Shown: one piece after another, positions 1 to 54,900 of the stretch
Position numbering within the stretch: the stretch's first letter is position 1
How the letters are laid out: each line of letters opens with the position of its first letter
Virus record (IMG/VR): IMGVR_UViG_3300025121_000011
Span: 1-64,000 of that record
DNA: 64,000 nt
Strand: one strand, 5' to 3'
Translations under genes and position numbers: made by a program
The notes under the pieces: model-generated
The model's database searches: none
What the model was told of the DNA's origin: nothing
What the model saw: only the letters and a program-made list of their open reading frames with translations

Positions 1-537
1 AATCCTCCTAAATATTTATCTGTATTGATTACTTATACAGTTGCCGCAGATGTTCTGCCTATATTTGAAAAGCATTTTCCGAAGGATTTAAGACCAAGAA
101 AAGCTGTTGAAGCGTCTAAGATGTATTTAGATGGATATGCGGTTGATGCTGATGCTGCTTATGTTGCTTATGCTGCTTATGCTGCTTATGTTGCTGTTTA
201 TGCTGCTTATGTCGCTGCTGATACTGCTTATGCTGCTTATGCTGCTAATGTCGCTTATTATGCTGCTAATGTCGCTTATTGTGCTGCTTATGCTACTGTT
301 AATGACATCGCTGATTATACTGCTTATGCTGTTTATTATGCAGCTCTTGCCTCTTCCGAAGAACACATCTTAAATCTTATTTTATCTCTGCTTCCTCAGA
401 TGATCGATTATGCTGTTGAAAATCAAATCAAGTTGTTTACCGGATCCGGAGATTTCTCAGAGATATTTGAGATGTTAACCGATGAGCAGAAGAAGCTGGT
501 CATATATAATATGAATGTAATTGGGAGTTGGAAATGA
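1..537 (+). CDS. Imm5-like variable-core array protein, copy A1 (5' end lies before the window)
   Basis: Frame 1 is open from base 1 (NPPKYLSVLITYTVAADVLPIFE...DLRPRKAVE); Ala/Tyr core; conserved SSEEH...VIYNM C-module. Confidence 0.85.
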   Translation, partial: NPPKYLSVLITYTVAADVLPIFEKHFPKDLRPRKAVEASKMYLDGYAVDADAAYVAYAAYAAYVAVYAAYVAADTAYAAYAANVAYYAANVAYCAAYATVNDIADYTAYAVYYAALASSEEHILNLILSLLPQMIDYAVENQIKLFTGSGDFSEIFEMLTDEQKKLVIYNMNVIGSWK

Positions 538-1091
538 TTTCATCAGGAGATTTGGTTAAATTCATTAATCCTCCTAAATATTTATGCGTATTAATTGCTT
601 ATACAGTTGCCGCAGATGTTCTGCCTATATTTGAAAAGCATTTTCCGAAGGATTTAAGACCAAGAAAAGCTGTTGAAGCGTCTAAGATGTATTTAGATGG
701 ATATGCGGTTGTTGCTGCTGATGCTTATACTGCTGCTTATGCCGCTTATGCTGCTTATGATGCTTATGCTGCTAATGCTACTTATGATGCTAATGCTGCT
801 TATGCTGCTTATGCTGCTTATTATGCTGCCGCTGCTGCTTATGTTTATGCTACCGCTGTCGCTATTGCTAATACTGATTATGTCGCTCGTTATGCGGTTA
901 GAGTCTCTTCTAAAGAACATGTCTTTAATCTTATTTTATCTCTGCTTCCTCAGATGATCGATTATGCCGTTGAAAATCAAATTAAATTATTCACCGGACC
1001 TGGAGACTTCTCAGATATATTTGAGATGTTAACCGATGAACAGAAGAAATCGGTGATATACAATATGGATGTAATTGGAGGTTGGAAATGA
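534..1091 (+). CDS. Imm5-like variable-core array protein, copy A2
   Basis: ATG at 534 overlaps the previous TGA (ATGA) with GGAG upstream; VLPIFE..PKDLRPRKAVE resembles the Imm5-like N-terminal motif. Confidence 0.85.
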   Translation: MISSGDLVKFINPPKYLCVLIAYTVAADVLPIFEKHFPKDLRPRKAVEASKMYLDGYAVVAADAYTAAYAAYAAYDAYAANATYDANAAYAAYAAYYAAAAAYVYATAVAIANTDYVARYAVRVSSKEHVFNLILSLLPQMIDYAVENQIKLFTGPGDFSDIFEMLTDEQKKSVIYNMDVIGGWK

Positions 1092-1672
1092 TTTCATCAA
1101 GAAATTTGGTTAAATTCATTAATCCTCCAGAATATTTATGCGTATTGATTGCTTATACAGTTGCCGCAGATGTTCTGCCTATATTTGAAGAGAAGTATCC
1201 GAAGGATTTAAGACCGAGAAAAGCTGTTGAAGTTGCTAAGATGTATTTGGAGGGATATGCGGTTGTTGCTGCTGATGTTGATGCTGCTATTTATGCCGCT
1301 GCTGATGCTGCTGATGCTGCTTATGCTGCTAATGCTGCTAATGCTGCTTATTATGCTTATGTTGCTGTCGCTAATGTTGCTAATGCTGCTTATGCTGCTG
1401 CTTATGTTGCTTATTATGCCGCTGTTGCTGATGTTTCTTATACCGTTGCTTATGCTACTTATGCTGCTGATTATGCAGTTTCTGTTTCTTCCGAAGAACA
1501 CATCTTCAATTTGATTCTATCTCTGATTCCTCAGATGATCGATTATGCTGTTGAAAATCAAATCAAATTATTTACTGGATCCGGAGACTTCTCGGAGATA
1601 TTTGAGATGTTAATTGATGAACAGAAGAAGCTGGTGATATTTAATATGGATGTATTTAGGAATTGGAAATGA
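1088..1672 (+). CDS. Imm5-like variable-core array protein, copy A3
   Basis: Same architecture, ATGA coupling. Confidence 0.85.
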   Translation: MISSRNLVKFINPPEYLCVLIAYTVAADVLPIFEEKYPKDLRPRKAVEVAKMYLEGYAVVAADVDAAIYAAADAADAAYAANAANAAYYAYVAVANVANAAYAAAYVAYYAAVADVSYTVAYATYAADYAVSVSSEEHIFNLILSLIPQMIDYAVENQIKLFTGSGDFSEIFEMLIDEQKKLVIFNMDVFRNWK

Positions 1673-2247
1673 TTTCATCAAAGAATTTAGTTTACTTCAT
1701 TAATCCTCCTGAATATTTATCTGTATCGATTGCTTATACAGTTGCCGCAGATGTTCTGCCTATATTTGAAAAGCATTTTCCGAAGGATTTAAGACCAAGA
1801 AAAGCTGTTGAAGCGTCTAAGATGTATTTAGATGGATATGCGGTTGATTCTGCTGATGCTTATGATGCTGCTTATGCTGCTTATTCTGCTTATGCTGCTG
1901 CTTATGATGTTGCTGTCGCTGCTAATGCTGCTCATATTGTTTATGCTACTTATGCTGCTGCTGCTGCTAATGCTGCTGCTGCTGTTGTTAACGCTGCTAA
2001 TGCCACCGCTAATGCTGTTGCTGTTAATACTGCTTATGCCGTTTATTATGCAGTTTCTGCCTCTTCCGAAGAACACATCTTCAATCTTATTTTATCTCTG
2101 ATTCCTCAGATGATCGATTATGCTGTTGAAAATCAAATCAAGTTGTTCACCGGATCTGGAGACTTCTCGGAAATATTTGAGAAGTTAACCGATGAACAGA
2201 AGAAATCGGTGATATACAATATGGATGTAATCGGGAATTGGAAATGA
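1669..2247 (+). CDS. Imm5-like variable-core array protein, copy A4
   Basis: Same architecture, ATGA coupling. Confidence 0.85.
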   Translation: MISSKNLVYFINPPEYLSVSIAYTVAADVLPIFEKHFPKDLRPRKAVEASKMYLDGYAVDSADAYDAAYAAYSAYAAAYDVAVAANAAHIVYATYAAAAANAAAAVVNAANATANAVAVNTAYAVYYAVSASSEEHIFNLILSLIPQMIDYAVENQIKLFTGSGDFSEIFEKLTDEQKKSVIYNMDVIGNWK

Positions 2248-2837
2248 TTTCATCAAAAGATTTGGTTCTCTTCATTAATCCTCCTAAATATTTATCCGTA
2301 TTGATTGCTTATACAGTTGCCGAAGATGTTCTGCCTATATTTGAAAAACAGTATCCAAAGGATTTAAGACCGAGAAAAGCTGTTGAAGCGTCTAAGATGT
2401 ATTTAAATGGATATGCTGCTGATGCTAATGCTGCTTATGATGCTGCTAATGCTGCTTATGATGCTGCTAATGCTGCTTATGCTGCTTATGATGCTGCTAA
2501 TGCTGCTGCTTATGTTGCTTATTATGCTGCTAATGCTGCTGCTGCTTATGTTGCTTATTATGCTGTTTATGCTGTTAATGCTGCTAATGCTGCTTATTAT
2601 GCTGCTAGTGCCGTTTATTATGCAGCCAAAGCCTCTTCCGAAGAACACATCTTTAATCTTATTCTATCTCTGCTTCCTCAGATGATCGATTATGCTGTTG
2701 AAAATCAAATCAAGTTGTTCACCGGTTCTGGAGACTTCTCGGAAATATTTGAGATGTTAACTGATGAACAGAAGAAATCGGTGATATACAATATGGATAT
2801 GTTTTATTTAAGTAATAATAAATTACTTTTTAAGTAA
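2244..2837 (+). CDS. Imm5-like variable-core array protein, copy A5 (last of array, unique tail)
   Basis: Same architecture; similarity ends after YNMD. Confidence 0.85.
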   Translation: MISSKDLVLFINPPKYLSVLIAYTVAEDVLPIFEKQYPKDLRPRKAVEASKMYLNGYAADANAAYDAANAAYDAANAAYAAYDAANAAAYVAYYAANAAAAYVAYYAVYAVNAANAAYYAASAVYYAAKASSEEHIFNLILSLLPQMIDYAVENQIKLFTGSGDFSEIFEMLTDEQKKSVIYNMDMFYLSNNKLLFK

Positions 2838-2893: not shown

Positions 2894-3283
2894 ATGATGC
2901 AGTATGTTGAAGTAAGACATAATCTATATATTTGTTTTAATCCATTTGAAATTGTTGAAGAATCAAGAAAAGTTAATGGGTGTGGAAATAAGTATTATAA
3001 AATTCCTATTATATTATTAATGTTTTTAACTCCAATATTAGGTGGGTTATTTGTAATAGCCTTTCCAATGATTATATTCGCTTCTATCATTTATTCTATC
3101 TTTGCAATAATATTTGGAAATATGAAAGAAGATGTTTTAGGCTTTGGAGTTCAAGAATATGATCCAATTATATCTTATTTAGCAAATCGTGAAATAAAAG
3201 ATTTACCATTAGAAGAAGAAGAATTAGAAGAAGAATTAAAAGAGTTGGTATCTGAAGTTGAAATAGTTAGAAAATCTGAATAA
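2894..3283 (+). CDS. Small membrane protein
   Basis: AGGAGG RBS; long hydrophobic segment IPIILLMFLTPILGGLFVIAFPMIIF; acidic tail. Confidence 0.7.
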   Translation: MMQYVEVRHNLYICFNPFEIVEESRKVNGCGNKYYKIPIILLMFLTPILGGLFVIAFPMIIFASIIYSIFAIIFGNMKEDVLGFGVQEYDPIISYLANREIKDLPLEEEELEEELKELVSEVEIVRKSE

Positions 3284-3568
3284 ACCATAAAATAATGAGT
3301 ATAAATAATATTTTGATTATAGATATATTGAATGGAAATATCACCACTAATTAATATATATAATAGGGGGGGCAATACAATGTGATATTTTCTTTTTTTA
3401 AATGGCGGTGTTTGAGGCTATATCTGGTATATCGCAGTTAAGATGCGTGAGGATCTTTGATATGCCGAACAGTGATGTCGACAAATAAATTTTGATTGTT
3501 TTGTGTTATGATTGAAGGCGGTGTATCCTATCTATCTATGTTTTTATAGTAGGTGAGGATACGTTTTG

Positions 3569-3750
3569 GGGCAATTAGCTTATAACTGGATAAAGCATAT
3601 ATATAAAGATTATGAAGCTAATAACAGTATGCATGTTGTTATTAGATTATTATCTTCTACTAACTTATGTAAAGTTACGTTGTGGCCGCAGCGTAAAGAA
3701 AAGTAAGAATATGTAAAGTATAAAAGTGGGTTCGAATCCTACATTGCTCT
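3569..3750 (+). ncRNA. tRNA-like RNA with ~110-nt structured insert in the anticodon arm (intron-containing tRNA or tRNA mimic)
   Basis: Acceptor GGGCAAT(3569-75)/ATTGCTC(3743-49); U8A9; D-stem GCTT/AAGC with GG in the loop; T-arm GTGGG-TTCGAAT-CCTAC(3726-42); no encoded CCA. Confidence 0.8.
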
Positions 3751-3759
3751 TATAAAAGA

Positions 3760-4779
3760 TTATTTGAATGAAAACAAACCTACGTCAACAATTTTTAAAT
3801 GATTATCTTTTGTGGACATCATAATGTTTTCAGCGTGAACATCTTTCCAATGAATATTATAACTGCCTGATATAAATCGTAATGTGTCAAGTAGACCTTG
3901 TATATTTTCAGCAACATCATTATTAGGTCTTTTATTAAATATTTCTTCTGAATACGGAAATGCTATTTTAAAAAGTTCTTCTGATAGAAGATCATATATA
4001 ATATCTTTGATATTATAATAATTCGGATTACTGGTGTGTTTTTCAATTATATTAACAACTTGTGTTAAACTCAAAGTGTTTGTTTTTGGAAAATCTTTTA
4101 ATATTTGTTCTATTGTTGAAATATCAACATCCTCTTTAATTCTCTTTTGAATTTCTATTTCTATTTGGGTAATAAAAAGTGGTGTAAGTATTTTACGCCA
4201 AATATCTTTTCTGTATACTTTTGCCGCAGAAAATTCGCTAGCAACTTCGGCTGGAAGTGGTTTTAATTGTTCCATAACAATTAAATCATATAATTCATTT
4301 TCTGGCATAATTGTTCCACGTTTAATTAAATATATTTTTGGAAAATAGTCTGCATATTGTTTTGGCATTTGTTCTATGCGTTTTTGCAGAGCACCCCATA
4401 TTGGAAAGTCATTTGCTAAATAGCTGATAGTGATTTTTGCTGCAACTTGTTGACCCTTATAAATCGCGGAAAATACGCTACCAAATGCACCGGAGCCAAG
4501 ATGCTCCTTTGCATTTTGAGGCACCATTTGCAATCCATTTTCTTTTAGTATTTTTGCAGCCAAACTAATGATAACGGTTTGGTACTTATCTGATTTTTGT
4601 GCCGAAGGAATTATCTTTTCTAAATATTCTTCATCAGATATGGATTTTTCACCAAACTCTTCAGCATCTTCTTTATATCTATCTTCGAAAGATTGGTGTA
4701 ATTCAGAAACTGCTTGAGATTCAACAGTCAGATGTAAATCATTAAGTATTGTCTGCAAAATTTTAAGATAATCTTTCAT
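3760..4779 (-). CDS. Protein kinase-like (Hanks-type fold) protein
   Basis: LGSGAFGSVF Gly-loop, VAAKI Lys, WKDVHAENIM catalytic loop, KIVDVG. Confidence 0.85.
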   Translation of the reverse strand: MKDYLKILQTILNDLHLTVESQAVSELHQSFEDRYKEDAEEFGEKSISDEEYLEKIIPSAQKSDKYQTVIISLAAKILKENGLQMVPQNAKEHLGSGAFGSVFSAIYKGQQVAAKITISYLANDFPIWGALQKRIEQMPKQYADYFPKIYLIKRGTIMPENELYDLIVMEQLKPLPAEVASEFSAAKVYRKDIWRKILTPLFITQIEIEIQKRIKEDVDISTIEQILKDFPKTNTLSLTQVVNIIEKHTSNPNYYNIKDIIYDLLSEELFKIAFPYSEEIFNKRPNNDVAENIQGLLDTLRFISGSYNIHWKDVHAENIMMSTKDNHLKIVDVGLFSFK

Positions 4780-7183: not shown

Positions 7184-7930
7184 ATGTCCATAGGTCTAAA
7201 AATAGATAATTTGCCAACTTTTAATATTGTTCCGGATTTTAATTTATTTGTGACGGGTGGATTCGTTCGAGATTCTCTTTTGCATATTGCATCAAAAGAT
7301 ATAGACATTGCTTGCGAAGCAAAAAGCTTTACAGAAATGTCCGATTGGGTAGAAAAAACTCATAGTAAAGTTTTCTTATCTAATCCTGAGTTCTTAACTA
7401 TTCGAGCCTTATATAAAAAAGGTGATGCACGAGATTATGTCTTGTGTCGAAAAGATGGAGCTTACAGTGATGGACGACATCCGGATGAAGTGAGTGCTGG
7501 TTCTATTCTGGATGATTTATCTCGACGGGACTTTACGATTGGAGCCATGGCAATAGACCTTAAAACTGGTCAGCTAATCGATCCTCACGGTGGGGCGTCT
7601 GATTTAAAACAACGCCTCATAAGAACCGTGGGGCGTGCTAGCGATAGGTTTGAAGAAGACCCGTTACGAATGTTGCGCGCTATTAGGTTTGCAATTACCA
7701 AGGGATTCTTTATTTCAGATGAAATTCTAAATATTTTATCAAATCCGGATTGGGCGGAGAAACTTTTGACAGTTTCTTCAGAAAGAATAAGAGAAGAAGT
7801 GTTTAAATGTTTTGTATTTGATACAGTTAGAAGTATGGAATTTTTATGTTCACATTGCTCTGCTGAGCTAAAAAATATAATTTTTGGCAATACAGGAATC
7901 TGGTTGAAGCCCACTATGGAGGCTCGATAA
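7184..7930 (+). CDS. cca: CCA-adding enzyme / poly(A) polymerase family nucleotidyltransferase (short form)
   Basis: GGFVRD, DIDI, DLSRRDFT, EDPLRMLRAIRF, ERIREE motifs. Confidence 0.9.
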   Translation: MSIGLKIDNLPTFNIVPDFNLFVTGGFVRDSLLHIASKDIDIACEAKSFTEMSDWVEKTHSKVFLSNPEFLTIRALYKKGDARDYVLCRKDGAYSDGRHPDEVSAGSILDDLSRRDFTIGAMAIDLKTGQLIDPHGGASDLKQRLIRTVGRASDRFEEDPLRMLRAIRFAITKGFFISDEILNILSNPDWAEKLLTVSSERIREEVFKCFVFDTVRSMEFLCSHCSAELKNIIFGNTGIWLKPTMEAR

Positions 7931-7933
7931 GAT

Positions 7934-8611
7934 TTGGACAAAAAAATACAATTAGAGATAGAATTGGAATCTTTGGCCACAATGTTTATGTGTGATGCTA
8001 TAATGATTGGTAACATAAAATGGACTATAGCAAAAAAACACTCTTTAGCCCTTGGAATGAGTAGCTTTTCTGAGGACATCAAATCTTTAAAAGAAGATTT
8101 TCTAATTAATAAAACGCCAAATATTCCACTTAAAAGTGATAACACAATAAACTGTAAATTGGCAGCAATGCTTATTGTAGCTTTGGCGGTCACAAATAGG
8201 CATTGGCATTCTTTTCTTGAAGAGATCGAAATCAAATACGGAAAGAATATATATTTACAAGTTATTTTAGAATTACTTGAGCTTAAAAAATATTATCAAT
8301 TAACAAAAAATGATAAAGGTTACTTAGTAAAATATTGGGCAGATCAAGAATATCTAGAAGAAGATTTTGTAAAAATGGTTTGCTTATCTTATTTTGATTC
8401 AGACTATTATTCGGCAAAGACGCTCTATATGCGAAAATTAGCAAAATCAAATAAGTTTGATCTACTTAGATTGTTTACAAAATCTTCAGCAAAAGGGATT
8501 CAACAAGTTCTTGTAGAATTGCTCCCCAAAGAAGATCTTATATATTTAATTAATTCGCCTCACGAAGAGATACAGAAAATATTGGAAAAAAAACTTAATA
8601 CGGAATCTTAA
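7934..8611 (+). CDS. Helical hypothetical protein with C-terminal motif B
   Basis: Ends VLVELLPKEDLIYLINSPHEEIQKILEKKL. Confidence 0.7.
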   Translation: MDKKIQLEIELESLATMFMCDAIMIGNIKWTIAKKHSLALGMSSFSEDIKSLKEDFLINKTPNIPLKSDNTINCKLAAMLIVALAVTNRHWHSFLEEIEIKYGKNIYLQVILELLELKKYYQLTKNDKGYLVKYWADQEYLEEDFVKMVCLSYFDSDYYSAKTLYMRKLAKSNKFDLLRLFTKSSAKGIQQVLVELLPKEDLIYLINSPHEEIQKILEKKLNTES

Positions 8612-9638: not shown

Positions 9639-10319
9639 ATGTCAGACAAATATCCAAGATCCATGCACCTCCCATTTTCCCCTGGGACCACATCAGATGA
9701 TCGCATTATGAACGAAGACGACTTAGCTTTTTTGATTAGTCAGGAAGTGTTATTGACTGAAAAAATGGATGGTTCAAATGTGTGCTTTACAAAAGACGAG
9801 GTATTTTCACGCTCTCACAGCGGGCCTCCTTCTCATAAATCTTTTGATACGTTAAAATTATTGCACAAACAAAAGCAAAGCTTAATACCACCCAATATTT
9901 CAGTCTTTGCAGAGTGGACTTATGCCGTGCACTCAATACGATACACTCTTTTGCCATCTCATATATTTATCATAGGAATTAGAGATGATGAATTAAATTT
10001 TTGGTGGCCATGGGATGAAGTATCTTTGTTTGCAAAATCAAAACTCGAACTTCCCACGGTTCCAGTTATACTGCGCGGTATGTTTCCAGACAAAGAAGTT
10101 TTTGAAAAAATAATTGTGGATTTTTCAAAACTTTCTTCATTTTATGGACCAGATCGGGAAGGGTTGGTGGTTCGACATACCTCCGAGCTTTATGATGCAG
10201 ATAAAAAAATTCTTGGTCTTGGCAAAATGGTTCGTAAAAATCATGTTACAACCGATGTTCATTGGTCTCGACAACAAATTGAAGTACAGCCCACGCTAAA
10301 TTATTTTCAAAAAAAATGA
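9639..10319 (+). CDS. ATP-dependent RNA ligase family protein
   Basis: KYPRS.HLPFSPG N-terminus; motif I TEKMDGSN (KxDG); FAEW; REGLVVR; KMVR. Confidence 0.85.
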   Translation: MSDKYPRSMHLPFSPGTTSDDRIMNEDDLAFLISQEVLLTEKMDGSNVCFTKDEVFSRSHSGPPSHKSFDTLKLLHKQKQSLIPPNISVFAEWTYAVHSIRYTLLPSHIFIIGIRDDELNFWWPWDEVSLFAKSKLELPTVPVILRGMFPDKEVFEKIIVDFSKLSSFYGPDREGLVVRHTSELYDADKKILGLGKMVRKNHVTTDVHWSRQQIEVQPTLNYFQKK

Positions 10320-13454: not shown

Positions 13455-13816
13455 GGGGGCGAAATAGATTTCGACAGGGTGGATTAAATTAATGGTGCAA
13501 GTCGTCTACGATAACAATAGACGTTAAAGTTGTTATAAAAAAATCAATTGCTGAATTAAAACTCGCAGCTTAATCTTTAAGATTAAGTCCAGGTTTCTAA
13601 CCACCTGGTTTCCAAGGTTAGATAAGCGGTTGGCCACGCTGACAGAAAACAAATGCCAAAATGGTTACCCTCATTGTATGAGGTGGAATTCCTTAGCTCA
13701 TTTAAGGAATGGTTGGAAAAAAGAGATACTTTGCTTATTTAGAGAAATAAGACAAGCTTGTAAATGACCAGATGTTGAAGCTGCTTTGGACGAGGGTGCG
13801 ATTCCCTCCGCCTCCA
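13455..13816 (+). ncRNA. ssrA: tmRNA
   Basis: GGGGGCG...GATTTCGAC 5' end pairs with CGCCTCC-A (G3.U70 Ala determinant); T-arm GAGGG-TGCGATT-CCCTC; pk1 CGTCTA/TAGACG plus ATAACAA/TTGTTAT; tag 13550-13573 AELKLAA*. Confidence 0.95.
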
Positions 13817-13855
13817 CTATTTAACGGTGTCTTGTAAAGGAGGGTTTTGAGAATA

Positions 13856-33563: not shown

Positions 33564-34134
33564 TAAAACCTCATTAATCCTTCTTTTTTTAATTCCATTT
33601 TTATTATGCGGATATATTCCTAAAAATTATAAACCATTAGCTGATGTATCTTTTGAAATAGTAGAACAGTTTGATGATTCTAAAATATATAGACCAACAA
33701 ATACAATATTTTCAGGTCAATTTATTTCTAAAGAAGTATCTCTTATTAAAGATAGTTTAATGGATTTTTCAAAAGAATGGCGATTGCCAGAGAAATCATG
33801 TAAAAGTCTTGATGTCGATTATTATGTGATAGATAGTAAAATTATTAATGATGTAAAAAGATTCCCATTAACATTAAATGATATTTCAGATCGATGGGCT
33901 ATGTATAGCCCGTATCACGAGAAATCTGGTTATTCTGTTATTATGTTGGCAAATTCAACATATTCTACATCAAGAATTAATAGCGTAATTTTAGCTCATG
34001 AATATGCTCATTATGTCTATGATAAAAATTGTTGGAGTGACTATTGGTCTGGTAATACAGAAACTTTTGCGCAGGCATTTCATAAATATTATGGATTAAA
34101 TAGATTTGGGAGAATATATAATGCGGTTAGATAA
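33535..34134 (+). CDS. Exported HExxH metalloprotease-like protein
   Basis: N-terminal hydrophobic signal; LAHEYAH followed by a downstream E. Confidence 0.65.
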   Translation: MSKKMMELNNKTSLILLFLIPFLLCGYIPKNYKPLADVSFEIVEQFDDSKIYRPTNTIFSGQFISKEVSLIKDSLMDFSKEWRLPEKSCKSLDVDYYVIDSKIINDVKRFPLTLNDISDRWAMYSPYHEKSGYSVIMLANSTYSTSRINSVILAHEYAHYVYDKNCWSDYWSGNTETFAQAFHKYYGLNRFGRIYNAVR

Positions 34135-35674
34135 AATTAAAAGATGTTTGGCATATGATGATGTATTGCTGGTACCAAATAAATTATCAACTGGATTATC
34201 TAGATTGGATATGGATTTATCAACTTTAGTTGGTAATTTAAATTTGAAAATTCCAATTGTGTCATCACCAATGGATACTGTTACCGAATCTGAAATGGCT
34301 ATTGAAATAGGTCGGCTTGGTGGATTGGGAATATTGCATAGATTCAATACCCCGCAAGAACAGGCTGAAATGATTCGTGTCATGCTTTTACCGCCGAATG
34401 CAATGAAGGTCGGACGTTCAGCATATATCGCACCAGCAATTGGTGTAACTAAAGATGAATTGGAGAGAGCCAAATATCTATATAATGAATTTGGTAAAAC
34501 AATTGATATGATGGTTGTTGACGTAGCAAACGGATATCATGTATTAATGCGGGATACAGTTAAATATATTCAAGATTTAACACAGGGTGATGTACAAATT
34601 ATGGCTGGAAATGTTGCTACAGAAGAGGGGTTTTTGTTTTTGGCAGAATTAGGGGTAAATGCGGTCAGAGTTGGAATCGGGGGAGGATGTCACACTGCTG
34701 ATACAAAAGTCTTGATGACTACTGGTTATTATAAAAATATAAATCAGGTCATAATTGGAGATTGGGTTATAAATAAATTTGGTCAACCGGTACAAGTTAA
34801 GGGTGTGATAAACAATGGATACAAAAAGGTTGTTAAGGTTTGTGTTGCAAACTGGAAAGAGCCTATTTATGTTACACCAGAACATGAATATTGGCGAGCC
34901 AGTTTATCCAATGTAGATTGCTTTCCAGATGAAGAGTGTGTTAATTTTAAATTAAGTTGGGCGCCGATTGGTGAAATTGAAAGGGGAGATGTTTTATTAA
35001 CTCCTAGAAATATAGAATTTGATGGGGTCGAGAATGGACTTTCATATTATTATTCTGAGGTTATCTCTATAGAAGAATGTCCTATAGATATGGAGGTTTG
35101 GGATATAGAGATAGATTGTCCAACTCACAGTTTTGTAGCCAACAATTTGATTGTTCACAACTCCATTTGTAAGACTCGAATACAAACAGGATTTGGCATG
35201 CCAACTTTGGCTTCTATTGATGATTGCGCTGATGCTGCAATAAAAACAGGTGTTTCTATTATAGCTGATGGTGGAATTAAATATCCTTCTGATGTTGCTA
35301 AAGGAATTGCGGCTGGTGCGTCCGCAGTAATGTGTGGCGGTATTTTAGCCGGAACAAAAGAATCTCCTGGCGAAGTTATTTATGATAAAGAAGGAAAAGC
35401 TTGGAAGAAGTATCGAGGTATGGCGAGTACTGAAGTGCAAAACGAAAAAAGAGGAGGAATGAAAAAGGGTACTTGTGCGGAAGGTGTATCGACATTAATC
35501 CCATATCAAGGTAGCTTAAAAAGAGTAATTGAAGAATTTACAGGAGGTATTCGCTCTGCTCTTACTTATAATAACTCTAAAACACTTGATAACTTTAGAG
35601 AAACAGCTTTGTTTGTAGAAATTACAGGTTCTGGACTTTCAGAATCTCATGCTTATGGAACAGTAAAAAGATAG
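34121..35674 (+). CDS. guaB: IMP dehydrogenase (GuaB family, no CBS subdomain), intein-containing
   Basis: YDDVLLVP, SSPMDTVTE, GGLGILHR, AGNVAT, GIGGG|SICKTR, ADGGIK, YRGMAS, AEGV; GMP reductase not excluded. Confidence 0.9.
   Translation: MRLDKIKRCLAYDDVLLVPNKLSTGLSRLDMDLSTLVGNLNLKIPIVSSPMDTVTESEMAIEIGRLGGLGILHRFNTPQEQAEMIRVMLLPPNAMKVGRSAYIAPAIGVTKDELERAKYLYNEFGKTIDMMVVDVANGYHVLMRDTVKYIQDLTQGDVQIMAGNVATEEGFLFLAELGVNAVRVGIGGGCHTADTKVLMTTGYYKNINQVIIGDWVINKFGQPVQVKGVINNGYKKVVKVCVANWKEPIYVTPEHEYWRASLSNVDCFPDEECVNFKLSWAPIGEIERGDVLLTPRNIEFDGVENGLSYYYSEVISIEECPIDMEVWDIEIDCPTHSFVANNLIVHNSICKTRIQTGFGMPTLASIDDCADAAIKTGVSIIADGGIKYPSDVAKGIAAGASAVMCGGILAGTKESPGEVIYDKEGKAWKKYRGMASTEVQNEKRGGMKKGTCAEGVSTLIPYQGSLKRVIEEFTGGIRSALTYNNSKTLDNFRETALFVEITGSGLSESHAYGTVKR
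34688..35161 (+). mobile_element. Mini-intein (158 aa, no endonuclease) in guaB
   Basis: Starts CHTADT; block B VTPEH; VWDIEI...HSFVANNLIVHN then Ser+1. Confidence 0.93.
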
Positions 35675-46819: not shown

Positions 46820-47902
46820 ATGGGCTCATTGAATATTCCTGTTACCATTGGCAATGATAAACCATTAAAATTAAAAAAAGTATTACAAGCTTTTAAAATA
46901 GATTGCGCGAACATAGAAATAAATGAAGGGACTTATTTTGATGTTTATGATATTTCATTAGAACCGGGAACACACTCTAATCATATTGATAGGGCGTTAG
47001 TAGATGTTGGAATAGCACTTAAAGCTCATTCATGTCCAAGAGGTTATCCAATTCTTAATAAGGGTGTCTATAGAATTGAAGTCCAAAAACAAGAATTAAA
47101 ATCAATCGGATTTGAACAAGCTTACTGCCCCGCGGATAATATGTATGCACCGATTGCACTTGGTGTCCGCGCCGATGGTTCTAAATTTTGTATAGATTTG
47201 CAACAACTTCCAAATTTATTAATTGGGGGAATTCCAGGTTCTGGAAAAAGTGTGTTGTTGCACTCTATCATCTTGTCGCTTATTAAAGCAAATGCAAGTT
47301 TGTATTTGGTTGACCCAAAAATGGTGGAGTTCAATATTTATGAGAATGTAGAGAACGTAAGATCTATCGTTTATGATGTAGCTGGCGTAGAAGGTATAAT
47401 TAGTGCAGTTTCAATAATAATGGAGAGACGATTTAATTTATTAAAATCTAATAAAGTTCGTAATGTTCAGGATTATAATAAAAAGGTGCCAAAAAAGAAA
47501 CTAAGACCTATTGTCATCATCATCGATGAATGGGCGGATATTATTTTGCAAAATAATAAAATTCAAGAATCTTTATGTAGAGTGGCACAAAAAGGAAGGG
47601 CGGCCGGAATAAGTATTGTATTAGCTACGCAAAGACCATCCTCTAGGGTGATTAGTGGATTAATTAAAGCAAATTTCTCCGGCAGGATTGGTCTTAGAGT
47701 GGTTTCTAATATAGATAGTCGAGTTATTTTAGATCAAAAAGGTGCCGAAAAGATCGAAGACGTTGGTGTGGGGTTGTACTTAGATCAAACCATGAACGAA
47801 GCAAAGATGTTTAGAGCAACTTGGATTCAAAATATAGAAATAGAATTAAGACGATTAGGTGCTAAAACAAAAAAATCCGGTTTTTGGTCAATATTTAATT
47901 GA
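46820..47902 (+). CDS. FtsK/SpoIIIE-family ATPase (motor domain only)
   Basis: GIPGSGKS, LVDPKMVE, IIIDEWAD, GRAAGI..VLATQRP, DSRVILD..GAEK. Confidence 0.9.
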   Translation: MGSLNIPVTIGNDKPLKLKKVLQAFKIDCANIEINEGTYFDVYDISLEPGTHSNHIDRALVDVGIALKAHSCPRGYPILNKGVYRIEVQKQELKSIGFEQAYCPADNMYAPIALGVRADGSKFCIDLQQLPNLLIGGIPGSGKSVLLHSIILSLIKANASLYLVDPKMVEFNIYENVENVRSIVYDVAGVEGIISAVSIIMERRFNLLKSNKVRNVQDYNKKVPKKKLRPIVIIIDEWADIILQNNKIQESLCRVAQKGRAAGISIVLATQRPSSRVISGLIKANFSGRIGLRVVSNIDSRVILDQKGAEKIEDVGVGLYLDQTMNEAKMFRATWIQNIEIELRRLGAKTKKSGFWSIFN

Positions 47903-47910
47903 GAGTACAG

Positions 47911-49575
47911 ATGAAAAAATATATATCCAAGGATGACATTATTCGTTGCATTAATATTGTAGATATAGCGGAAGAATTTGAAATCAAATTAGAAGATGCA
48001 GCATCTGGAAGTTTTAATCGAAAATGTATTTGTCCTTCCAAAGAACATAAGAATGGAAATGAAAGAACTGGTTCGCTATATATAGACACCGTAGATAATA
48101 ATTTTTGGTGTTTTGGATGTTTGCCACCAGATCAAGAGATCTGGACTGCATATGATGGTCTTGTTCCAATTAAAGATATTAAAGTTGGTGATATTGTTAT
48201 TGATAAAAACGGGCAAGAGGCGGCTGTAACTAATCATATTGAGAAAAAGGTTGATGAAAGACTTCTATCTTTTGAATTAGCAAATATACATAAACATGTT
48301 TTGTCATTTACAGAAAATCATACCATGTTGGTATGTAGAAATATACATGAGGATCTTAATTACTTTTGGAAGCATAGCAAGACTGAGGAAGTTAAATTTA
48401 ACATTCAAGCTAAAAGAAGGACGGCTAAAAAATATTCCAATAAGTTGAGATCTATTGAGGTAATAGCTAAAGATGTAATCGTCGGTGATTACTTTATGCA
48501 TCCCGTTATTCAATCAGATTTAAAAATCAATGAAATTAAAAATGTTTTCTTAAAAAAATATACAAAAGGTGTTAAAAATAATCGAATAGATACAATTCCC
48601 ATAAATGAGAACACTATGTGGATATTTGGTCTTTATTGTGCAGAAGGCTCATCATATAGGGGTGGAATTCGTTTTTCAATGCATTTCAAAGAAAAACATA
48701 TGTTGAATAGAGTTGCTGCGATTCTAAAAGAAGACTTGGGTCTGAATTCCACAATACATGAGTGGGAAGATAAAAATGGTGCCGAACTCACATGTTCAAA
48801 TACAGATTTGGAGCAATTCTTTAAGAATTCTTTCGGCCAGGGATGTCAAAACAAAACTGCTCCAGCTTATTTTGCAAGATTATCTATTAGATTACAAGAT
48901 GCGTTCTGGAATGGTGTTATGGATGGGAATGGTTCATCGGATAAGTGTGTACTTGGAATTACATCATATAAGTTAATATCTTTAATGCAGAAAATATCTG
49001 TTAACTTAATGAAGCCATTTTCTTTTTCGAAATTAGAAACTAGTCAGACCAAAAAGAATGTGTTTATTATGAGATTTTATAAGAATAATTCTTCAAATGT
49101 GTTTTTTGAAGAAGTTGACGGACACATGTGTATGTTGCAAAAAGTCATTGCTATAAGTTATGAAGAGCTTAAAACCTCTGTTTTTGATATATCGGTAGAG
49201 AAAACAAATACATTTCTTTGTAAGGATTATATTGTACATAATTGTAATGCTGGAAAAAATGTAATTGATTTTTATATGATATGTGCAGACTTAGAATTTG
49301 CAGATGCATTAAAGATATTGCGAGAAAGAATTGATCCCAGTAAAGCAACCGGTACTTCTCGTCTTCCGGTACAATCAAGTTTTGGAGAATTGCTTAAAAT
49401 ATCTGACTTACTTAGAGAAACAATGATAAATCATCCAAGTGATTTATATTGGATTAATATATTGATGCAAAATATAGATCAATATATTTTTGATATAGCA
49501 TCTGATGATGTGGATGGTGCAAAGGTTTTATTTGATAAGGTTGAAAATGAAATTTTAAATAGATATAAAAAATAA
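47911..49575 (+). CDS. Stand-alone primase-type CHC2 zinc-binding protein, intein-containing
   Basis: CICPSKEH...ERTGS...FWCFG|C.AG.NVIDF; ~179 aa after splicing; no TOPRIM domain. Confidence 0.85.
   Translation: MKKYISKDDIIRCINIVDIAEEFEIKLEDAASGSFNRKCICPSKEHKNGNERTGSLYIDTVDNNFWCFGCLPPDQEIWTAYDGLVPIKDIKVGDIVIDKNGQEAAVTNHIEKKVDERLLSFELANIHKHVLSFTENHTMLVCRNIHEDLNYFWKHSKTEEVKFNIQAKRRTAKKYSNKLRSIEVIAKDVIVGDYFMHPVIQSDLKINEIKNVFLKKYTKGVKNNRIDTIPINENTMWIFGLYCAEGSSYRGGIRFSMHFKEKHMLNRVAAILKEDLGLNSTIHEWEDKNGAELTCSNTDLEQFFKNSFGQGCQNKTAPAYFARLSIRLQDAFWNGVMDGNGSSDKCVLGITSYKLISLMQKISVNLMKPFSFSKLETSQTKKNVFIMRFYKNNSSNVFFEEVDGHMCMLQKVIAISYEELKTSVFDISVEKTNTFLCKDYIVHNCNAGKNVIDFYMICADLEFADALKILRERIDPSKATGTSRLPVQSSFGELLKISDLLRETMINHPSDLYWINILMQNIDQYIFDIASDDVDGAKVLFDKVENEILNRYKK
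48118..49242 (+). mobile_element. Intein (375 aa) with LAGLIDADG-type endonuclease motifs
   Basis: CLPPDQ start; FTENH block B; GLYCAEGS and GVMDGNG; VFDISVE..NTF...YIVHN then Cys+1. Confidence 0.93.
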
Positions 49576-51656: not shown

Positions 51657-51914
51657 TGGATTTAAAGCAGTTTAATAAATTAGATCCCGAATTATATCAA
51701 GTTTGGTGGAAAGATGGGAGCTGTTCTTTGGCTGCAATTGGGATAAAACCAGATGGTGATAGATGGATAGCAATAACGGAATCGGAATGGTCATGGGTGG
51801 GTAAATTTAGGTTACTTTGAAAGTATTGTTGATGATATTTATATTATGAGATTATTAGATATTGACAAGTCAAATATATCTGTTGTGCTGGAATTTAGCG
51901 GGGGTGGTATTTGA
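51656..51914 (+). pseudogene. Small gene, probably frameshifted near 51800
   Basis: MDLKQF...YQVWWKDGSCSLAAIG...RWIA stops at 51820; another frame continues NLGYFES...GGGI* and overlaps the sbcC start. Confidence 0.4.
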
Positions 51915-54900
51915 TTCCAATTAATTTGAAAATAAAAAACTTTTTCTCTCATAAAGAGACTGAAATTGATTTTACTAAATTTAACTCTGCTTTATTAATC
52001 GGAAATGTAGAAGGTGATTATAACATTTCAAATGGCAGCGGAAAGTGTCTCTCTGGTAATACAATTTTGACAAGCCCGTTAACTGGAGAGAGAATCTCTA
52101 TAAGGGATTTGTATAATTGTAAAAAACCCTTTAGCGTTTGGGGCCTTGATAAAAATTTAAAATTATCTCCATCAGAAATTACAGCCATTCAATTATCTGG
52201 TAAGAAAGAAATTCTTAAAATTACTTTGGAGAATGGATATGAAGAATGTGTTTCAACAACACATCCCATTTTATCTATTGATAAAAACTGTGTTTTAGCC
52301 AAAGATTTATTAATTGGTAGTTATGTCGCTCAACCAAGGCATATGAATGTTCTATATCCTCAAAAAACCTTATCTATGGAAGAGTCGAGATTATTAGGTT
52401 TATATGCATCAGAGGGCGGATTGACAGAGGGACGCGCTCGGTTTACAAATGCAGATCAGGATATAATTGCGAAAGCCAAGCACGGCTTATGGAATAAAAA
52501 AGCTATAAATAGATGCCTTCCACCAGTTTTCTTTTCGGAATCAAAAGAAAATGTTGGGGCCTTTTTGGGAATGTTTTTTTCTGGAAATGGATATATATCA
52601 GATATAGAGCGAGCAAGAGAAATTTCTATTGGATTAGGATCAAAAGAATTTATTTATGATTTACAAGTATTATTGCAGCGATTTGGAATTCAGTCGTCTA
52701 TAAGATTTAAAAAGATAAATCTTATATACAATTCATGGATCTTATCTATTCATACAAATGTAGATAATTTTATCAAATTCTATGCTCTTGTAAATGATAA
52801 ATTATATGGGCCCAAAAAATATAGATTAGAAAAATTTAATGAATTCATTATTAAATTAAATAGTAATCCGAATAAAGATATTATTCCATCTGCTTTATAT
52901 TGTGATAAAATTATTGAATATAAGAAAAATTATAAACATTCTAATATCGATTTATCAAATAACCAATTAAAAAATACAAATTTAAGTCGCAAAAAATTAA
53001 AAAAATATGCTGAAATTGTAAATGACAAAGATCTTTTGTTGCTGTCTGATTCTGATATAGTTTGGACGAAAATCAAAAGTATAGAAAATATTGGTGTACA
53101 AGAAACTTATGATATTGAGATAGACAATGATACACATTTGTATGCTTTAAATGGGTTTATTACTCATAATTCCGCTCTGTTTGAAGCCATTTTATGGTGT
53201 TTATTTAATAAAGCTAGGACTGCATCTATGGATGATGTAGTTATGTGGAATGAAACAAATTGTTCTGTATCTTTTGAATTTATTCATCATGGAGAACGAT
53301 ATAAGATAATTAGAGATAGATCAAGAACTACTGGAACATCTACAGTAGAATTCTTTATAGATGATCAAGGAAGTTGGATTGATAAATCTGGTTCTACAGC
53401 GAGGTTAACAAATGATGAAATTATTTCAGTTATACATGTTGATTATAAAACTTTTATTAATTCAGCCTATTTTAGACAGAATGACATTTCTGAGTTTGCA
53501 GAATCTGATGCAGGAAGAAAAAAAGAAATCTTAAAAAATATTATCGATTTATCCAAATGGGATGAATATGAAAAGACAGCCAAAAATGATGTTAAACTAT
53601 TAAAACAAGAATGCATAATCTTAGAAGCGGAGTCTAATGAGCTAAATGATACTAGACAATCTTTGGCAGAATCAGAGTTTAAATTTAAAGAACTAACACG
53701 TTTAGTAGATTCTAAGGGTCTAGAAAGAGAAGATGTGGCACACAGACTAGAATCTTTAAGTGAAAAATATACATCATTAAAACAAAGTCTTGATACAGAT
53801 AAGTGGGATAAAATTACAGATGAAAATGCAAAATTAACAACATCTTTGAGTATTATAGAGGGTAAGAAAGATTCTTTGCTTAAAGAAATTTGTGATTATG
53901 AAAAGCAAGTTTCTGTAATGAATATAAAAATATCCGAATTTCAAGAAGAATTGGTAAATATAAAATTAGATCCAGAGGCTCCAAATAAGTTGTTGCTTTG
54001 TAGAGATGAAAAGAACAAATACAAAGCTGAGATTTCAAGTAATAAAGAGCGGTTATTAGAACTTGAATCAGTTAATATCATTAAAGGAACCTGTTATGTT
54101 TGTGGGCAGGGAGTTGCGGAAAATTTAAGTGAAATCTTAAAACAAGAGTATCAAACTAAAATTAATGATTTCAAAAGAAGGATAGTATTTGGAAAAAATA
54201 GAGTCAATCAATTAGAAGCAGAAATTAACCTTCTTGAGAAAATAACATTAGATGGTCAACGATTTCAGACGTTAACTGCATCCACAAGTTCATTACAATC
54301 TGAAATAAAAATGTTATGCGGACATCTGGATAGAATTTCTAATGAAAAAGTTGAAGTCATTAGACATATAAATGAAATACAAAGTAAATTAAAAAGTAAT
54401 GAAGATATTTTAACATCATTACGAGATGATAATTTTAACAGTTTGAGATTACAAATTAAAGAATTAAAGCAAAATCGAATTTCTGTACAATCTGAGTTAG
54501 AATCGATAAATAGAGATGTCGGGATCTATAGCCAAAGGGTTATTAATTTAACAGAAAAAATAAATAAAATGCAAAAATCTCAAAAGAAGTTGATTGAGAA
54601 AGGCAAAGAATTAATTATTCTTGAAAAATTTGTAAAATTATTAGGAAAAAACGGCATCCAAACTATTTTATTAAATGCAGTAATTGAAGATTTAGAATTA
54701 GTATCTAATGATATTCTATCTTCTATTTGTAATGAACCATTTCAGGTAATTTTAGAGACGCAAAGATTAGGAGCAGATGGATCTTCTATTGTAGATACTT
54801 TAGACTTAAAGGTTAAAAAGGATGGAATTATTCAGAATTTTAAATCTTTAAGTGGGGGAGAACAATTTAGAATTTCTTTGGCTTTACGAATTGCTTTAAG

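What the first reader, a model, noticed from the sequence alone, without database searches (positions are those of the whole stretch)
3569..3750. tRNA body with the anticodon loop replaced by a ~110-nt multi-hairpin insert
Seen: complete acceptor, D and T arms, but 128 nt lie between the D and T arms. These include strong hairpins CTAATAACAG../..TTGTTATTAG (3618-3645, extended by AAGAT/ATCTT) and TTACGTTG/CAGCGTAA (3675-3696), closed by TATAT pairing with ATGTA or GTATA. Removing 3605-3712 would give stem TATAT/GTATA with loop AT-GTA-AA, i.e. a Tyr(GUA)-like anticodon, next to an array rich in TAT codons. However, U73 and a 3-nt variable region are not bacterial Tyr features. The insert is too short for a typical group I intron. 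Inference: either an enzymatically spliced phage tRNA intron (an RNA ligase and a CCA enzyme are encoded 3-6 kb away) or a tRNA-mimic scaffold/decoy against anticodon nucleases.
Basis: partly seen in the sequence, partly recalled or inferred. Interest (0 to 1): 0.8.

Follow-up and report, generated by a model that had tools for sequence, protein, structure and literature searches.

The report
Phage tRNA-like RNA lacking an anticodon arm
A 335-kb groundwater phage carries a gene with a complete tRNA acceptor stem, D arm and T arm, but two strand-specific hairpins replace its anticodon arm; it is probably a tRNA-mimicking non-coding RNA, one of several in this genome, not a tRNA with a spliced intron.

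Summary
Window 3569-3749(+) has a 7-bp acceptor stem, a 4-bp D arm with G18G19 and a 5-bp T arm with loop TTCGAAT. About 129 nt lie between the D and T arms. They fold into a 7-bp closing stem and two long hairpins. ARAGORN in intron mode calls the element and makes no call in 100 shuffled windows.

The Tyr(GUA) reading is not supported. Of 1073 deletions tried, 465 gave a "valid" tRNA, with about 20 different anticodons. The body most resembles bacterial class-I tRNA-Val(UAC). The "spliced" product would have an all A-U/G·U anticodon stem, a 3-nt variable loop and U73.

No group I core and no bulge-helix-bulge (BHB) motif was found. The phage lacks a splicing endonuclease, RtcB and Ro.

The same genome holds at least four more long tRNA bodies, plus two that almost lack an anticodon arm. 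None of the long ones encodes CCA, whereas all eight canonical tRNAs found by both ARAGORN and Rfam do. Two related huge phages each carry a comparable element.

Best reading (confidence about 0.42): an unspliced tRNA-like RNA that keeps only the upper half of a tRNA. Rivals are a decaying tRNA relic and an enzymatically spliced tRNA. No RNA data or diverged orthologue exists, so function is inferred.

The parts
3569..3575 (+). Acceptor stem, 5' strand (GGGCAAT). G3568 could add an eighth pair with T3750.
   Evidence: Pairs with 3743-3749 (6 Watson-Crick pairs and 1 G·U).
3576..3597 (+). U8 A9 linker, D arm (GCTT / ATAACTGGATA / AAGC) and A26.
   Evidence: A14, G18G19 and A21 are present.
3598..3604 (+). 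5' strand of the 7-bp stem (UAUAUAU) that stands where the anticodon stem should be and closes the insert.
   Evidence: Minimum-free-energy and centroid folds. Pairs with 3709-3715 (one G·U).
3606..3656 (+). Hairpin H1: AAGAU/AUCUU, AUGA/UUAU and CUAAUAACAG/UUGUUAUUAG, with loop UAUGCAUG. It is a near-palindrome with G·U pairs on this strand only.
3664..3707 (+). Hairpin H2: CUUAU/GUAAG and UUACGUUGU/GCAGCGUAA, with loop GGCC and two G·U pairs.
3709..3715 (+). 3' strand of the closing stem (AUAUGUA).
3716..3725 (+). Unpaired A-rich linker (AAGUAUAAAA) in the position of the variable loop.
3726..3742 (+). T arm: GTGGG-TTCGAAT-CCTAC, with G53, T54, T55, C56, A58 and C61.
3743..3750 (+). Acceptor stem, 3' strand (ATTGCTC) and discriminator U3750. 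No CCA is encoded.
3521..3562 (+). Upstream hairpin (GUAUCCU...AGGAUAC) followed by GUUUU, ending 6 nt before the tRNA-like body. It may be a leader, a terminator or an end-protecting structure. Whether it belongs to the element is uncertain.
   Evidence: present in both the minimum-free-energy and centroid folds.
7184..7930 (+). Context: class II CCA-adding enzyme, head and neck only. It could supply the CCA that the element lacks.
9639..10319 (+). Context: ATP-dependent RNA ligase (PF09414). It is conserved with its neighbours in related huge phages.

Best explanation
The element is an unspliced tRNA-like non-coding RNA of about 181 nt before 3' maturation. It derives from a class-I, Val-type tRNA gene. 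It keeps only the upper half of a tRNA: the acceptor/T-arm helix and the D/T elbow. In place of the anticodon arm it has a 7-bp stem leading to a three-way junction with two long hairpins.

Inferred mechanism:
1. It is transcribed on the + strand.
2. The tRNA-like ends are recognised by RNase P and by 3'-end processing.
3. The phage's own CCA-adding enzyme can add the missing CCA.
4. The mature RNA binds proteins that recognise the acceptor, T arm or elbow, but it cannot decode.

It would thus act as a stable tRNA mimic. It could be a sink or decoy for enzymes that target tRNA ends or the elbow. It could also use the tRNA body as a natural scaffold that stabilises and presents the two hairpins.

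Shown: the anatomy, its non-randomness, its strand specificity, and the presence of sibling elements in this genome. Inferred: transcription, processing, CCA addition and every functional role.
For: - The tRNA body is real: ARAGORN in intron mode calls it and makes 0 calls in 100 shuffles. The strict scan gives 5 real hits against 1 in 30 shuffled genomes.
- All elbow and tertiary-contact nucleotides are kept: U8, A14, G18G19, A21, G53, T54, T55, C56, A58, C61.
- Compared with the nearest bacterial tRNA-Val consensus, every stem difference keeps pairing: C13-G22 to U-A on both sides, A51 to G, and C71 to U. The body has also drifted towards A+T. This suggests structural constraint.
- The insert is structured on the + strand only: -27.6 against -15.9 kcal/mol, with six G·U pairs and no A·C; z = -2.5. 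In the full-length fold the cloverleaf arms and the insert coexist.
- The genome holds a set of such bodies, all on the + strand: 317015-317249, 317879-318031, 318041-318153 and possibly 315677-315829. There is also 318704-318793 (8-bp stem, 20-nt loop). Two bodies have only 4-7 nt where the anticodon arm should be (315768-315830, 316109-316174) and score 32-49 bits on Rfam tRNA. Bodies with almost no anticodon arm cannot be decoders.
- None of the long bodies encodes CCA, whereas all eight canonical tRNAs found by both ARAGORN and Rfam do.
- Related huge phages also carry such elements. G002 has 211857-212015 (159 nt, CCA encoded) and a short-armed body with CCA at about 293858-293918. G004 has 372490-372635.
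- There is a known precedent: phage T4 rnaC (species 1 RNA) contains a tRNA-like 3' domain that ARAGORN detects.
- The neighbourhood is devoted to RNA ends and translation rescue: CCA enzyme, RNA ligase, SpoU methylase and tmRNA.
Against: - There is no transcript evidence. No RNA run holds the region, and the metatranscriptome contigs laid on it gave nothing.
- No diverged orthologue exists, so covariation could not be tested. The closest relative (G001, ligase 63% identical) has no such element. A metagenome scan found only the same genome and a near-identical one.
- The scans require intact arms, so finding only intact-armed elements is partly an ascertainment effect.
- This phage has far fewer tRNAs than its relatives (9 ARAGORN calls without introns, one of them dubious, against 22-43 Rfam matches). 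I also found no match to the three aminoacyl-tRNA synthetase (aaRS) families searched. That fits decay of a translation gene set.
- No binding partner or target is identified. The insert has no significant complementarity elsewhere in the genome.
Confidence: 0.42

Rival explanations
1. It is a decaying tRNA relic. A Val-type tRNA gene lost its anticodon arm to an insertion or replacement and no longer has a function. The intact arms only reflect how recent the event was, together with the fact that the scans can only find intact arms.
For: - The phage has only 9 ARAGORN tRNA calls without introns, one of them dubious, and no match to the three aaRS families searched. Relatives have 22-43 tRNA matches and carry aaRS genes in the syntenic block.
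- No CCA is encoded, unlike the phage's working tRNAs.
- The element is absent from the closest relative and no orthologue exists.
- TATAAAG / TATAAAAG direct repeats flank the insert (3602-3608 and 3719-3726), as an insertion event might leave.
- The genome is heavily invaded by selfish elements; three inteins lie in the window.
Against: - All 16 stem pairs and all elbow nucleotides are intact, although the body has drifted to about 34-50% G+C.
- Every stem change relative to the nearest tRNA-Val keeps pairing.
- At least five to seven such bodies exist with intact upper halves.
- The insert is single-copy, not a repeated mobile element.
- The insert's structure is specific to the sense strand.
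Confidence: 0.27
2. It is an intron-containing tRNA gene. The roughly 108-nt insert would be removed by protein enzymes: an endonuclease cut, for example of RNase III type, leaving 3'-OH and 5'-phosphate ends, followed by sealing by the phage RNA ligase. CCA addition would then give a roughly 74-nt decoding tRNA, for which the reader proposed Tyr(GUA).
For: - Removing 3605-3712 gives a cloverleaf that ARAGORN accepts as Tyr(GTA).
- ARAGORN in intron mode calls the locus.
- The five genes just upstream use TAT for 10.1% of codons, against 2.8% elsewhere.
- The phage has no normal tRNA-Tyr, while relatives keep one in the syntenic block.
- An ATP-dependent RNA ligase and a CCA-adding enzyme lie 3.4-6 kb away.
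Against: - The anticodon is arbitrary: 465 of 1073 deletions give a tRNA, with about 20 anticodons. ARAGORN's own best call is Leu(AAG).
- The product would have an anticodon stem made only of A-U and G·U pairs, a 3-nt variable loop and U73. Its class-I body is closest to tRNA-Val. Bacterial tRNA-Tyr is class II with A73 (established knowledge).
- No group I core is found and the insert is too short.
- No BHB motif lies at the borders.
- The phage encodes no splicing endonuclease or RtcB.
- The ligase, CCA enzyme and neighbouring genes are conserved in relatives that have no such element. Their presence therefore needs no intron to explain it.
- The bodies that almost lack an anticodon arm cannot be explained by splicing.
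Confidence: 0.12
3. It is a cis-acting processing or stability element. The tRNA-like fold would mark an RNase P or 3'-end processing site at the end of the + strand operon (the Imm5-like array and ORF 2894-3283). It would define and protect mRNA ends, as tRNA punctuation and t-elements do in organelles.
For: - It lies in a convergent intergenic region at the end of a + strand gene block.
- It is directly preceded by a hairpin and a short U run at 3521-3567.
- Sibling elements are interleaved with small ORFs.
- In one sibling (317015-317249) the T stem and acceptor 3' strand contain the AGGAGG that sits just before the next ORF's ATG at 317255.
Against: - A processing signal does not need an elaborate two-hairpin module of about 110 nt.
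- No transcript ends are known.
- Normal tRNAs would serve the same purpose.
Confidence: 0.12

Closest known systems
Phage T4 stable RNAs rnaC (species 1) and rnaD (species 2)
   Same: They are phage-encoded, stable, non-decoding RNAs of 119-139 nt with unknown function, annotated in the T4 tRNA cluster. ARAGORN finds a tRNA-like 3' domain inside rnaC, with an acceptor pairing, a T arm (CCGGG-TTCGAAT-CCCGG) and a long extra arm.
   Different: There is no detectable sequence relationship. In rnaC the extra sequence is a 5' extension plus a variable arm, not a replacement of the anticodon arm. The element studied here lies 3.5 kb from the genome end, far from this phage's tRNA island (278-331 kb); its siblings lie inside that island.
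Bacterial tRNA genes interrupted by group I introns (e.g. cyanobacterial tRNA-Leu(UAA), Azoarcus tRNA-Ile)
   Same: Both have an intervening sequence inside the anticodon region of a bacterial-type tRNA gene.
   Different: Group I introns need a catalytic core of about 200 nt or more. Here the insert is 108-129 nt and gives no Rfam group I match, even at E up to 10. No defined anticodon is restored.
Archaeal and eukaryotic pre-tRNAs with protein-spliced (BHB) introns
   Same: ARAGORN can model the insert at position 37/38. An RNA ligase gene lies nearby.
   Different: No BHB motif is found at the borders. The phage has no EndA or RtcB. The phage carries a tmRNA, and tmRNA is a bacterial system (established knowledge); bacteria are not known to have a tRNA splicing endonuclease.
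tmRNA tRNA-like domain
   Same: Both have an acceptor/T-arm mimic whose two halves are separated by a long structured insert. A genuine tmRNA lies 10 kb away in the same window (13455-13817).
   Different: This element keeps a full 4-bp D arm. It has no pseudoknots and no tag reading frame ending in a degradation signal. Neither the ARAGORN nor the Rfam tmRNA model calls it.
Bacterial Y RNAs (YrlA) with a tRNA-like domain, partnered with Ro/Rsr
   Same: Both are non-coding RNAs that mimic the tRNA elbow and acceptor and sit in RNA-repair gene neighbourhoods. Some jumbo phages encode Ro together with a tRNA-like partner (PMC7824862).
   Different: The topology is the opposite. From my own knowledge, not tested here, the ends of YrlA lie on the anticodon side, whereas here they lie at the acceptor. 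The phage has no TROVE/Ro gene, and there is no Rfam match.
Engineered 'tRNA scaffold' for recombinant RNA expression (Ponchon-Dardel design; cf. PMC3401473)
   Same: The architecture is the same: a foreign structured RNA is fused to the anticodon stem of a tRNA body, which provides folding, processing and nuclease resistance.
   Different: The scaffold is a laboratory design. A natural counterpart is only a hypothesis here.

Membership tests
Canonical tRNA (Rfam RF00005 / ARAGORN default) | 7-bp acceptor stem, D arm with G18G19, and T arm with a T54-T55-C56 loop | tested here: met
Canonical tRNA (Rfam RF00005 / ARAGORN default) | 5-bp anticodon stem with a 7-nt loop (U33, purine 37) directly between position 26 and the variable loop | tested here: not met
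   Default ARAGORN makes no call. Rfam tRNA gives no match, even at E up to 10. The only in-place candidate (3598-3614, loop AUAAAGA) has a U·U mismatch and an AAA anticodon.
Canonical tRNA (Rfam RF00005 / ARAGORN default) | 3' CCA end and aminoacylation | not testable with these tools
   CCA is not encoded here. It is encoded in all eight canonical tRNAs of this phage that both ARAGORN and Rfam find. Addition after transcription cannot be tested.
Group I intron in a tRNA gene | Conserved catalytic core (P3-P9) detectable by Rfam RF00028, with a length of about 200 nt or more | tested here: not met
   No match at E up to 10 in 3350-3850. The insert is 108-129 nt.
Protein-spliced (BHB) tRNA intron | Bulge-helix-bulge motif spanning both exon-intron borders | tested here: not met
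   My own motif search found only matches whose 5' side lies at 3630-3639, inside hairpin H1. None was at the 3598-3612 border.
Protein-spliced (BHB) tRNA intron | A splicing endonuclease (PF01974) and an RtcB-type ligase are available | tested here: not met
   Neither is found in the 335-kb phage genome, and the control genomes gave hits. The host genome is unknown.
Protein-spliced (BHB) tRNA intron | A spliced product exists | not testable with these tools
   No RNA run holds the locus.
tmRNA | Match to the tmRNA covariance model or ARAGORN tmRNA model, with a tag reading frame | tested here: not met
   The only tmRNA in the window is at 13455-13817.
YrlA-type Y RNA | A Ro/TROVE partner protein encoded in the genome | tested here: not met
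   PF05731 is absent and the control genomes gave hits.
Bacterial tRNA-Tyr | Class II body (long variable arm), A73 discriminator and GUA anticodon | tested here: not met
   The deletion product has a 3-nt variable loop and U73. The body is closest to class-I tRNA-Val. Relatives' genuine tRNA-Tyr genes are 85-86 nt and of class II.
Phage tRNA-like stable RNA (T4 rnaC type) | Phage-encoded, contains a tRNA-like acceptor/T-arm domain, and has no usable anticodon arm | tested here: met
   for this element; for T4 rnaC. This is a descriptive class, not a homology family.
Phage tRNA-like stable RNA (T4 rnaC type) | Accumulates as a stable processed RNA | not testable with these tools
   No transcript data exist.

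The most novel reading that the evidence does not exclude
Huge phages of this group may encode a so far undescribed class of tRNA-scaffolded RNAs. These would be tRNA upper halves (acceptor, T arm and D elbow) in which the anticodon arm is deleted or swapped for varied structured modules. They would be matured by RNase P and the phage CCA-adding enzyme. They could serve as decoys or sinks for host nucleases and toxins that target tRNA ends or the elbow, or as a natural expression scaffold for small functional RNAs. A rarer but more radical reading is that the inserts are removed by a bacterial or phage pathway based on protein enzymes (endonuclease plus ATP-dependent RNA ligase). That would be the first tRNA splicing in the bacterial world that does not rely on a group I intron.
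Probability: 0.3. Interest if true: 0.8.

Novelty: new variant of a known kind. Interest (0 to 1): 0.55.

Why it matters
Phage tRNA genes are usually read as codon-usage helpers or as replacements for tRNAs that host defences cut. This genome has as many tRNA-shaped genes that cannot decode as it has working tRNAs. They sit among RNA-repair and translation-rescue genes.

If these RNAs are expressed, they form a class of tRNA mimics that standard annotation misses entirely; ARAGORN in default mode and Rfam both skip this one. They would also point to phage-host conflicts fought over the acceptor end or elbow of tRNA, not over the anticodon loop. The architecture matches the engineered tRNA scaffold, so a natural version would interest RNA engineers.

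If the insert is instead spliced, the finding would be much more surprising.

Tried and rejected
- **Orthologues for covariation.**
  - The neighbouring kinase-like ORF has no homologues.
  - An exact 22-mer from the D arm is absent from viral contigs.
  - The phage GroEL found no close viral relatives.
  - The RNA ligase did find related 150-470 kb phages with conserved gene order. None has a sequence homologue of this element by blastn or nhmmer.
  - The short contigs of the closest ligase homologues gave either no DNA or no such element.
  - A gapped pattern (Val-type body with a 125-155 nt gap) found only the same genome, a near-identical 336,356-bp genome and one chance hit.
- **RNA evidence.** No RNA run holds the locus. 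The DNA contigs from other samples are identical, so they give no variants and no splice junctions.
- **Mobile element.** Rejected, because the insert is single-copy in the genome.
- **DNA palindrome or terminator for the minus-strand kinase gene.** Unlikely, because the minus strand folds 11.7 kcal/mol worse.
- **Y RNA with Ro, RtcB repair operon, archaeal-type splicing.** The corresponding genes are absent.
- **Charging by a phage aaRS.** No match to the three aaRS families searched in this phage.
- **Coding potential.** A 34-codon ORF (3612-3716) spans the insert. It has no ribosome-binding site, lies inside the hairpins, and is expected by chance in about 7% of frames at this composition (my estimate). 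I did not pursue it.
- **Shared motifs.** I looked for motifs common to the inserts of the sibling elements and found only 7-9-mers.
- **Literature.** My searches found no description of phage tRNAs with inserts that are not group I introns. One 2026 survey mentions tRNAscan 'introns' in jumbo-phage tRNAs without giving a mechanism (PMC13037316).

Full report
**Source.** The window is the first 64 kb of a 335,169-bp virus record with direct terminal repeats and 33.5% G+C. Near-identical DNA occurs in several groundwater and soil metagenome runs. The phage carries a tmRNA, a GroEL, several inteins and about nine ordinary tRNAs. It is a huge phage, and the tmRNA points to a bacterial host.

**Checking the observation.**
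- Acceptor stem GGGCAAT/ATTGCTC (3569-3575 / 3743-3749).
- U8 A9.
- D arm GCTT-ATAACTGGATA-AAGC (3578-3596).
- T arm GTGGG-TTCGAATCCTAC (3726-3742).
- 129 nt between the D and T arms.

Default ARAGORN and Rfam miss the element. The minimum-free-energy fold keeps all three tRNA arms. It closes the insert with a 7-bp stem, UAUAUAU/AUAUGUA, that leads to two long hairpins (z = -2.3; insert alone z = -2.5).

**Is it a tRNA with an intron?** I deleted every interval from 3597-3625 to 3689-3725 and ran ARAGORN on each product. Of 1073 deletions, 465 gave a "valid" tRNA, with about 20 different anticodons. The A+T-rich borders allow almost any register.
- ARAGORN's own choice is Leu(AAG) with a 99-nt intron.
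It would have an anticodon stem of only A-U and G·U pairs, a 3-nt variable loop and U73.

The T-arm/acceptor 19-mer occurs in 34 bacterial genome contigs. There it belongs mostly to class-I tRNA-Val(UAC/CAC), and in Solidesulfovibrio to tRNA-Arg(CCG). The body is 42/51 identical to such a tRNA-Val, against at most 37/51 to any tRNA or tRNA-like gene of the phage itself. Relatives' genuine tRNA-Tyr genes are 85-86 nt and of class II. The Tyr identity is therefore not supported, and no single deletion restores a UAC anticodon.

No splicing mechanism is visible either:
- No group I match, even at E up to 10, and the insert is too short.
- No bulge-helix-bulge motif at the borders.
- No splicing endonuclease, RtcB or Ro gene in the phage.

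**Signs that the element is maintained.** Relative to the nearest tRNA-Val consensus, the stem differences all preserve pairing. These are C13-G22 to U-A (a change on both sides), A51 to G and C71 to U. All elbow nucleotides are kept, although the body has drifted towards A+T. The insert's hairpins are near-palindromes whose imperfections are all G·U on the + strand. There are six G·U pairs and no A·C. The + strand folds at -27.6 kcal/mol and the complement at -15.9. The insert is single-copy in the genome. It is therefore a sense-strand RNA structure, not a repeated DNA element.

**It is not alone.** A strict scan asked for a T arm with the TTCRANY loop, a 7-bp acceptor stem, a D arm with GG and a length of at least 95 nt. 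It finds five such bodies in the genome, all on the + strand, against one hit in 30 shuffled genomes:
- 3569-3749.
- 317015-317249.
- 317879-318031.
- 318041-318153.
- 315677-315829, which is less certain.

Rfam's tRNA model adds three more:
- 318704-318793, with an 8-bp stem and a 20-nt loop.
- 315768-315830, with only 4 nt where the anticodon arm should be.
- 316109-316174, with only 7 nt there.

None of the long bodies encodes CCA, whereas all eight canonical tRNAs found by both ARAGORN and Rfam do. Bodies with almost no anticodon arm cannot decode. The common denominator of this set is therefore the upper half of the tRNA, not a hidden anticodon.

**Relatives.** The RNA ligase at 9639-10319 has 51-66% identical homologues on 150-470 kb phage contigs. 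These share the gene order M50 peptidase, CCA enzyme, ligase, S49 peptidase and SpoU methylase. Those phages carry normal tRNA-Tyr, tRNA-Lys and tRNA-Glu genes and aaRS genes in this block.
- The closest complete relative (G001) has no long tRNA body.
- G002 has a 159-nt body with encoded CCA, and a short-armed body with CCA.
- G004 has a 146-nt body.

None is a sequence homologue of the element studied here. A gapped-pattern scan of metagenome contigs found only the same genome and a near-identical one. No covariation test was possible. No RNA run holds the locus.

**Interpretation.** The best-supported reading is an unspliced tRNA-like RNA whose anticodon arm is replaced by a two-hairpin module. 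I infer that it is matured by RNase P and by the phage CCA-adding enzyme (7184-7930). I also infer that it acts through proteins that recognise the acceptor, T arm or elbow. The surrounding genes fit a role in conflicts over tRNA and translation. They include five Imm5-like immunity-type paralogues, the CCA enzyme, the ligase, the SpoU methylase and the tmRNA. This link is circumstantial.

The nearest known analogue is T4 rnaC, a stable RNA of unknown function that contains a tRNA-like domain detectable by ARAGORN. The architecture equals the engineered tRNA scaffold.

Three rivals remain:
- **A decaying relic.** This phage has far fewer tRNAs than its relatives, and I found no match to the three aaRS families searched.
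- **A protein-spliced tRNA.** The TAT-rich upstream array is a curious coincidence: 10.1% TAT codons.
- **A cis-acting processing signal.**

**Verdict.** The "spliced tRNA-Tyr" reading is unsupported. The "tRNA mimic/scaffold" reading is favoured but unproven. I class the element as a new variant of a known kind (phage tRNA-like RNAs). It is of moderate interest, which would rise if the set of upper-half mimics proves to be expressed.

Noticed in passing
window 25-2837 (+): Five tandem paralogous ORFs of about 170-200 aa sit at the genome terminus. The second of the five (528-1091), the only one scanned, matches Pfam Imm5_like, a putative immunity protein of polymorphic toxin systems (E = 1.3e-6). 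The array uses TAT for 10.1% of codons, against 2.8% in other ORFs of the window.
   Followed up: partly
window 13455-13817 (+): A phage-encoded tmRNA (Rfam 97 bits) with the predicted tag VKVVIKKSIAELKLAA. Relatives carry tmRNAs with different tags.
   Followed up: partly
G000:C1 317015-317249, 317879-318031, 318041-318153, 318704-318793 (+): Further tRNA bodies with 20-170 nt replacing or expanding the anticodon arm. None encodes CCA. In 317015-317249 the T stem and acceptor 3' strand contain the AGGAGG just before the ATG of the next ORF at 317255.
   Followed up: partly
G000:C1 315768-315830 and 316109-316174 (+): Two paralogous tRNA-like elements with almost no anticodon arm (Rfam tRNA 37 and 32 bits). 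Each is preceded by a similar hairpin (AGTAGTGTGATGG...CACTAC and ATAGTGATCATCC...CATTAC).
   Followed up: partly
G000:C1 318526-318602 (+): A tRNA-shaped gene with encoded CCA whose anticodon loop reads CGUUUCG: G at position 33 and C at position 37, around UUU. ARAGORN does not call it.
   Followed up: no
G000:C1 316753-317014 and 315588-315767 (+): Stretches in the tRNA island that appear ORF-free on inspection, are richer in G+C, and have many predicted helices. No Rfam match at E up to 0.1.
   Followed up: no
window 34106-35674, 47899-49575, 51911-55138 (+): Inteins interrupt an IMP dehydrogenase, a primase-like protein and an SMC/Rad50-like ATPase. The last intein carries a LAGLIDADG domain. 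The genome is heavily invaded by selfish elements.
   Followed up: no
window 3612-3716 (+): A 34-codon ORF spans the insert (MKLITVCMLLLDYYLLLTYVKLRCGRSVKKSKNM). It has a hydrophobic stretch followed by a basic tail, as type I toxins do. It has no ribosome-binding site and lies inside the hairpins, so it is probably a chance ORF.
   Followed up: partly
window 3602-3608 and 3719-3726 (+): The direct repeat TATAAAG / TATAAAAG flanks the insert. It may be a footprint of an insertion event, or simply low-complexity A+T sequence.
   Followed up: no
window 3760-4779 (-): An orphan protein-kinase-like ORF (Pfam Pkinase, E = 2e-8) converges on the element. It has no homologues outside this phage among 5.8 billion proteins.
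   Followed up: partly
L048 16857-17015 (G002 211857-212015); G002 about 293858-293918; L058 (G004 372490-372635, minus strand): Related huge phages also carry over-long or short-armed tRNA-like genes; the two in G002 encode CCA. G004 also has tRNAs with anticodon loops of abnormal length and a CUA suppressor.
   Followed up: partly
L096 2909-3047 (phage T4 rnaC, minus strand): ARAGORN in intron mode finds a tRNA-like domain inside the T4 species 1 RNA. It calls it 'Leu(taa)' with a long extra arm.
   Followed up: partly
window 7184-7930 and 7934-8611 (+): The CCA-adding enzyme is only 248 aa. It aligns to residues of about 12-266 of solved enzymes that are 390-580 aa long, which is the head and neck region. 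The next ORF (225 aa, no family match) might supply the missing body and tail.
   Followed up: no
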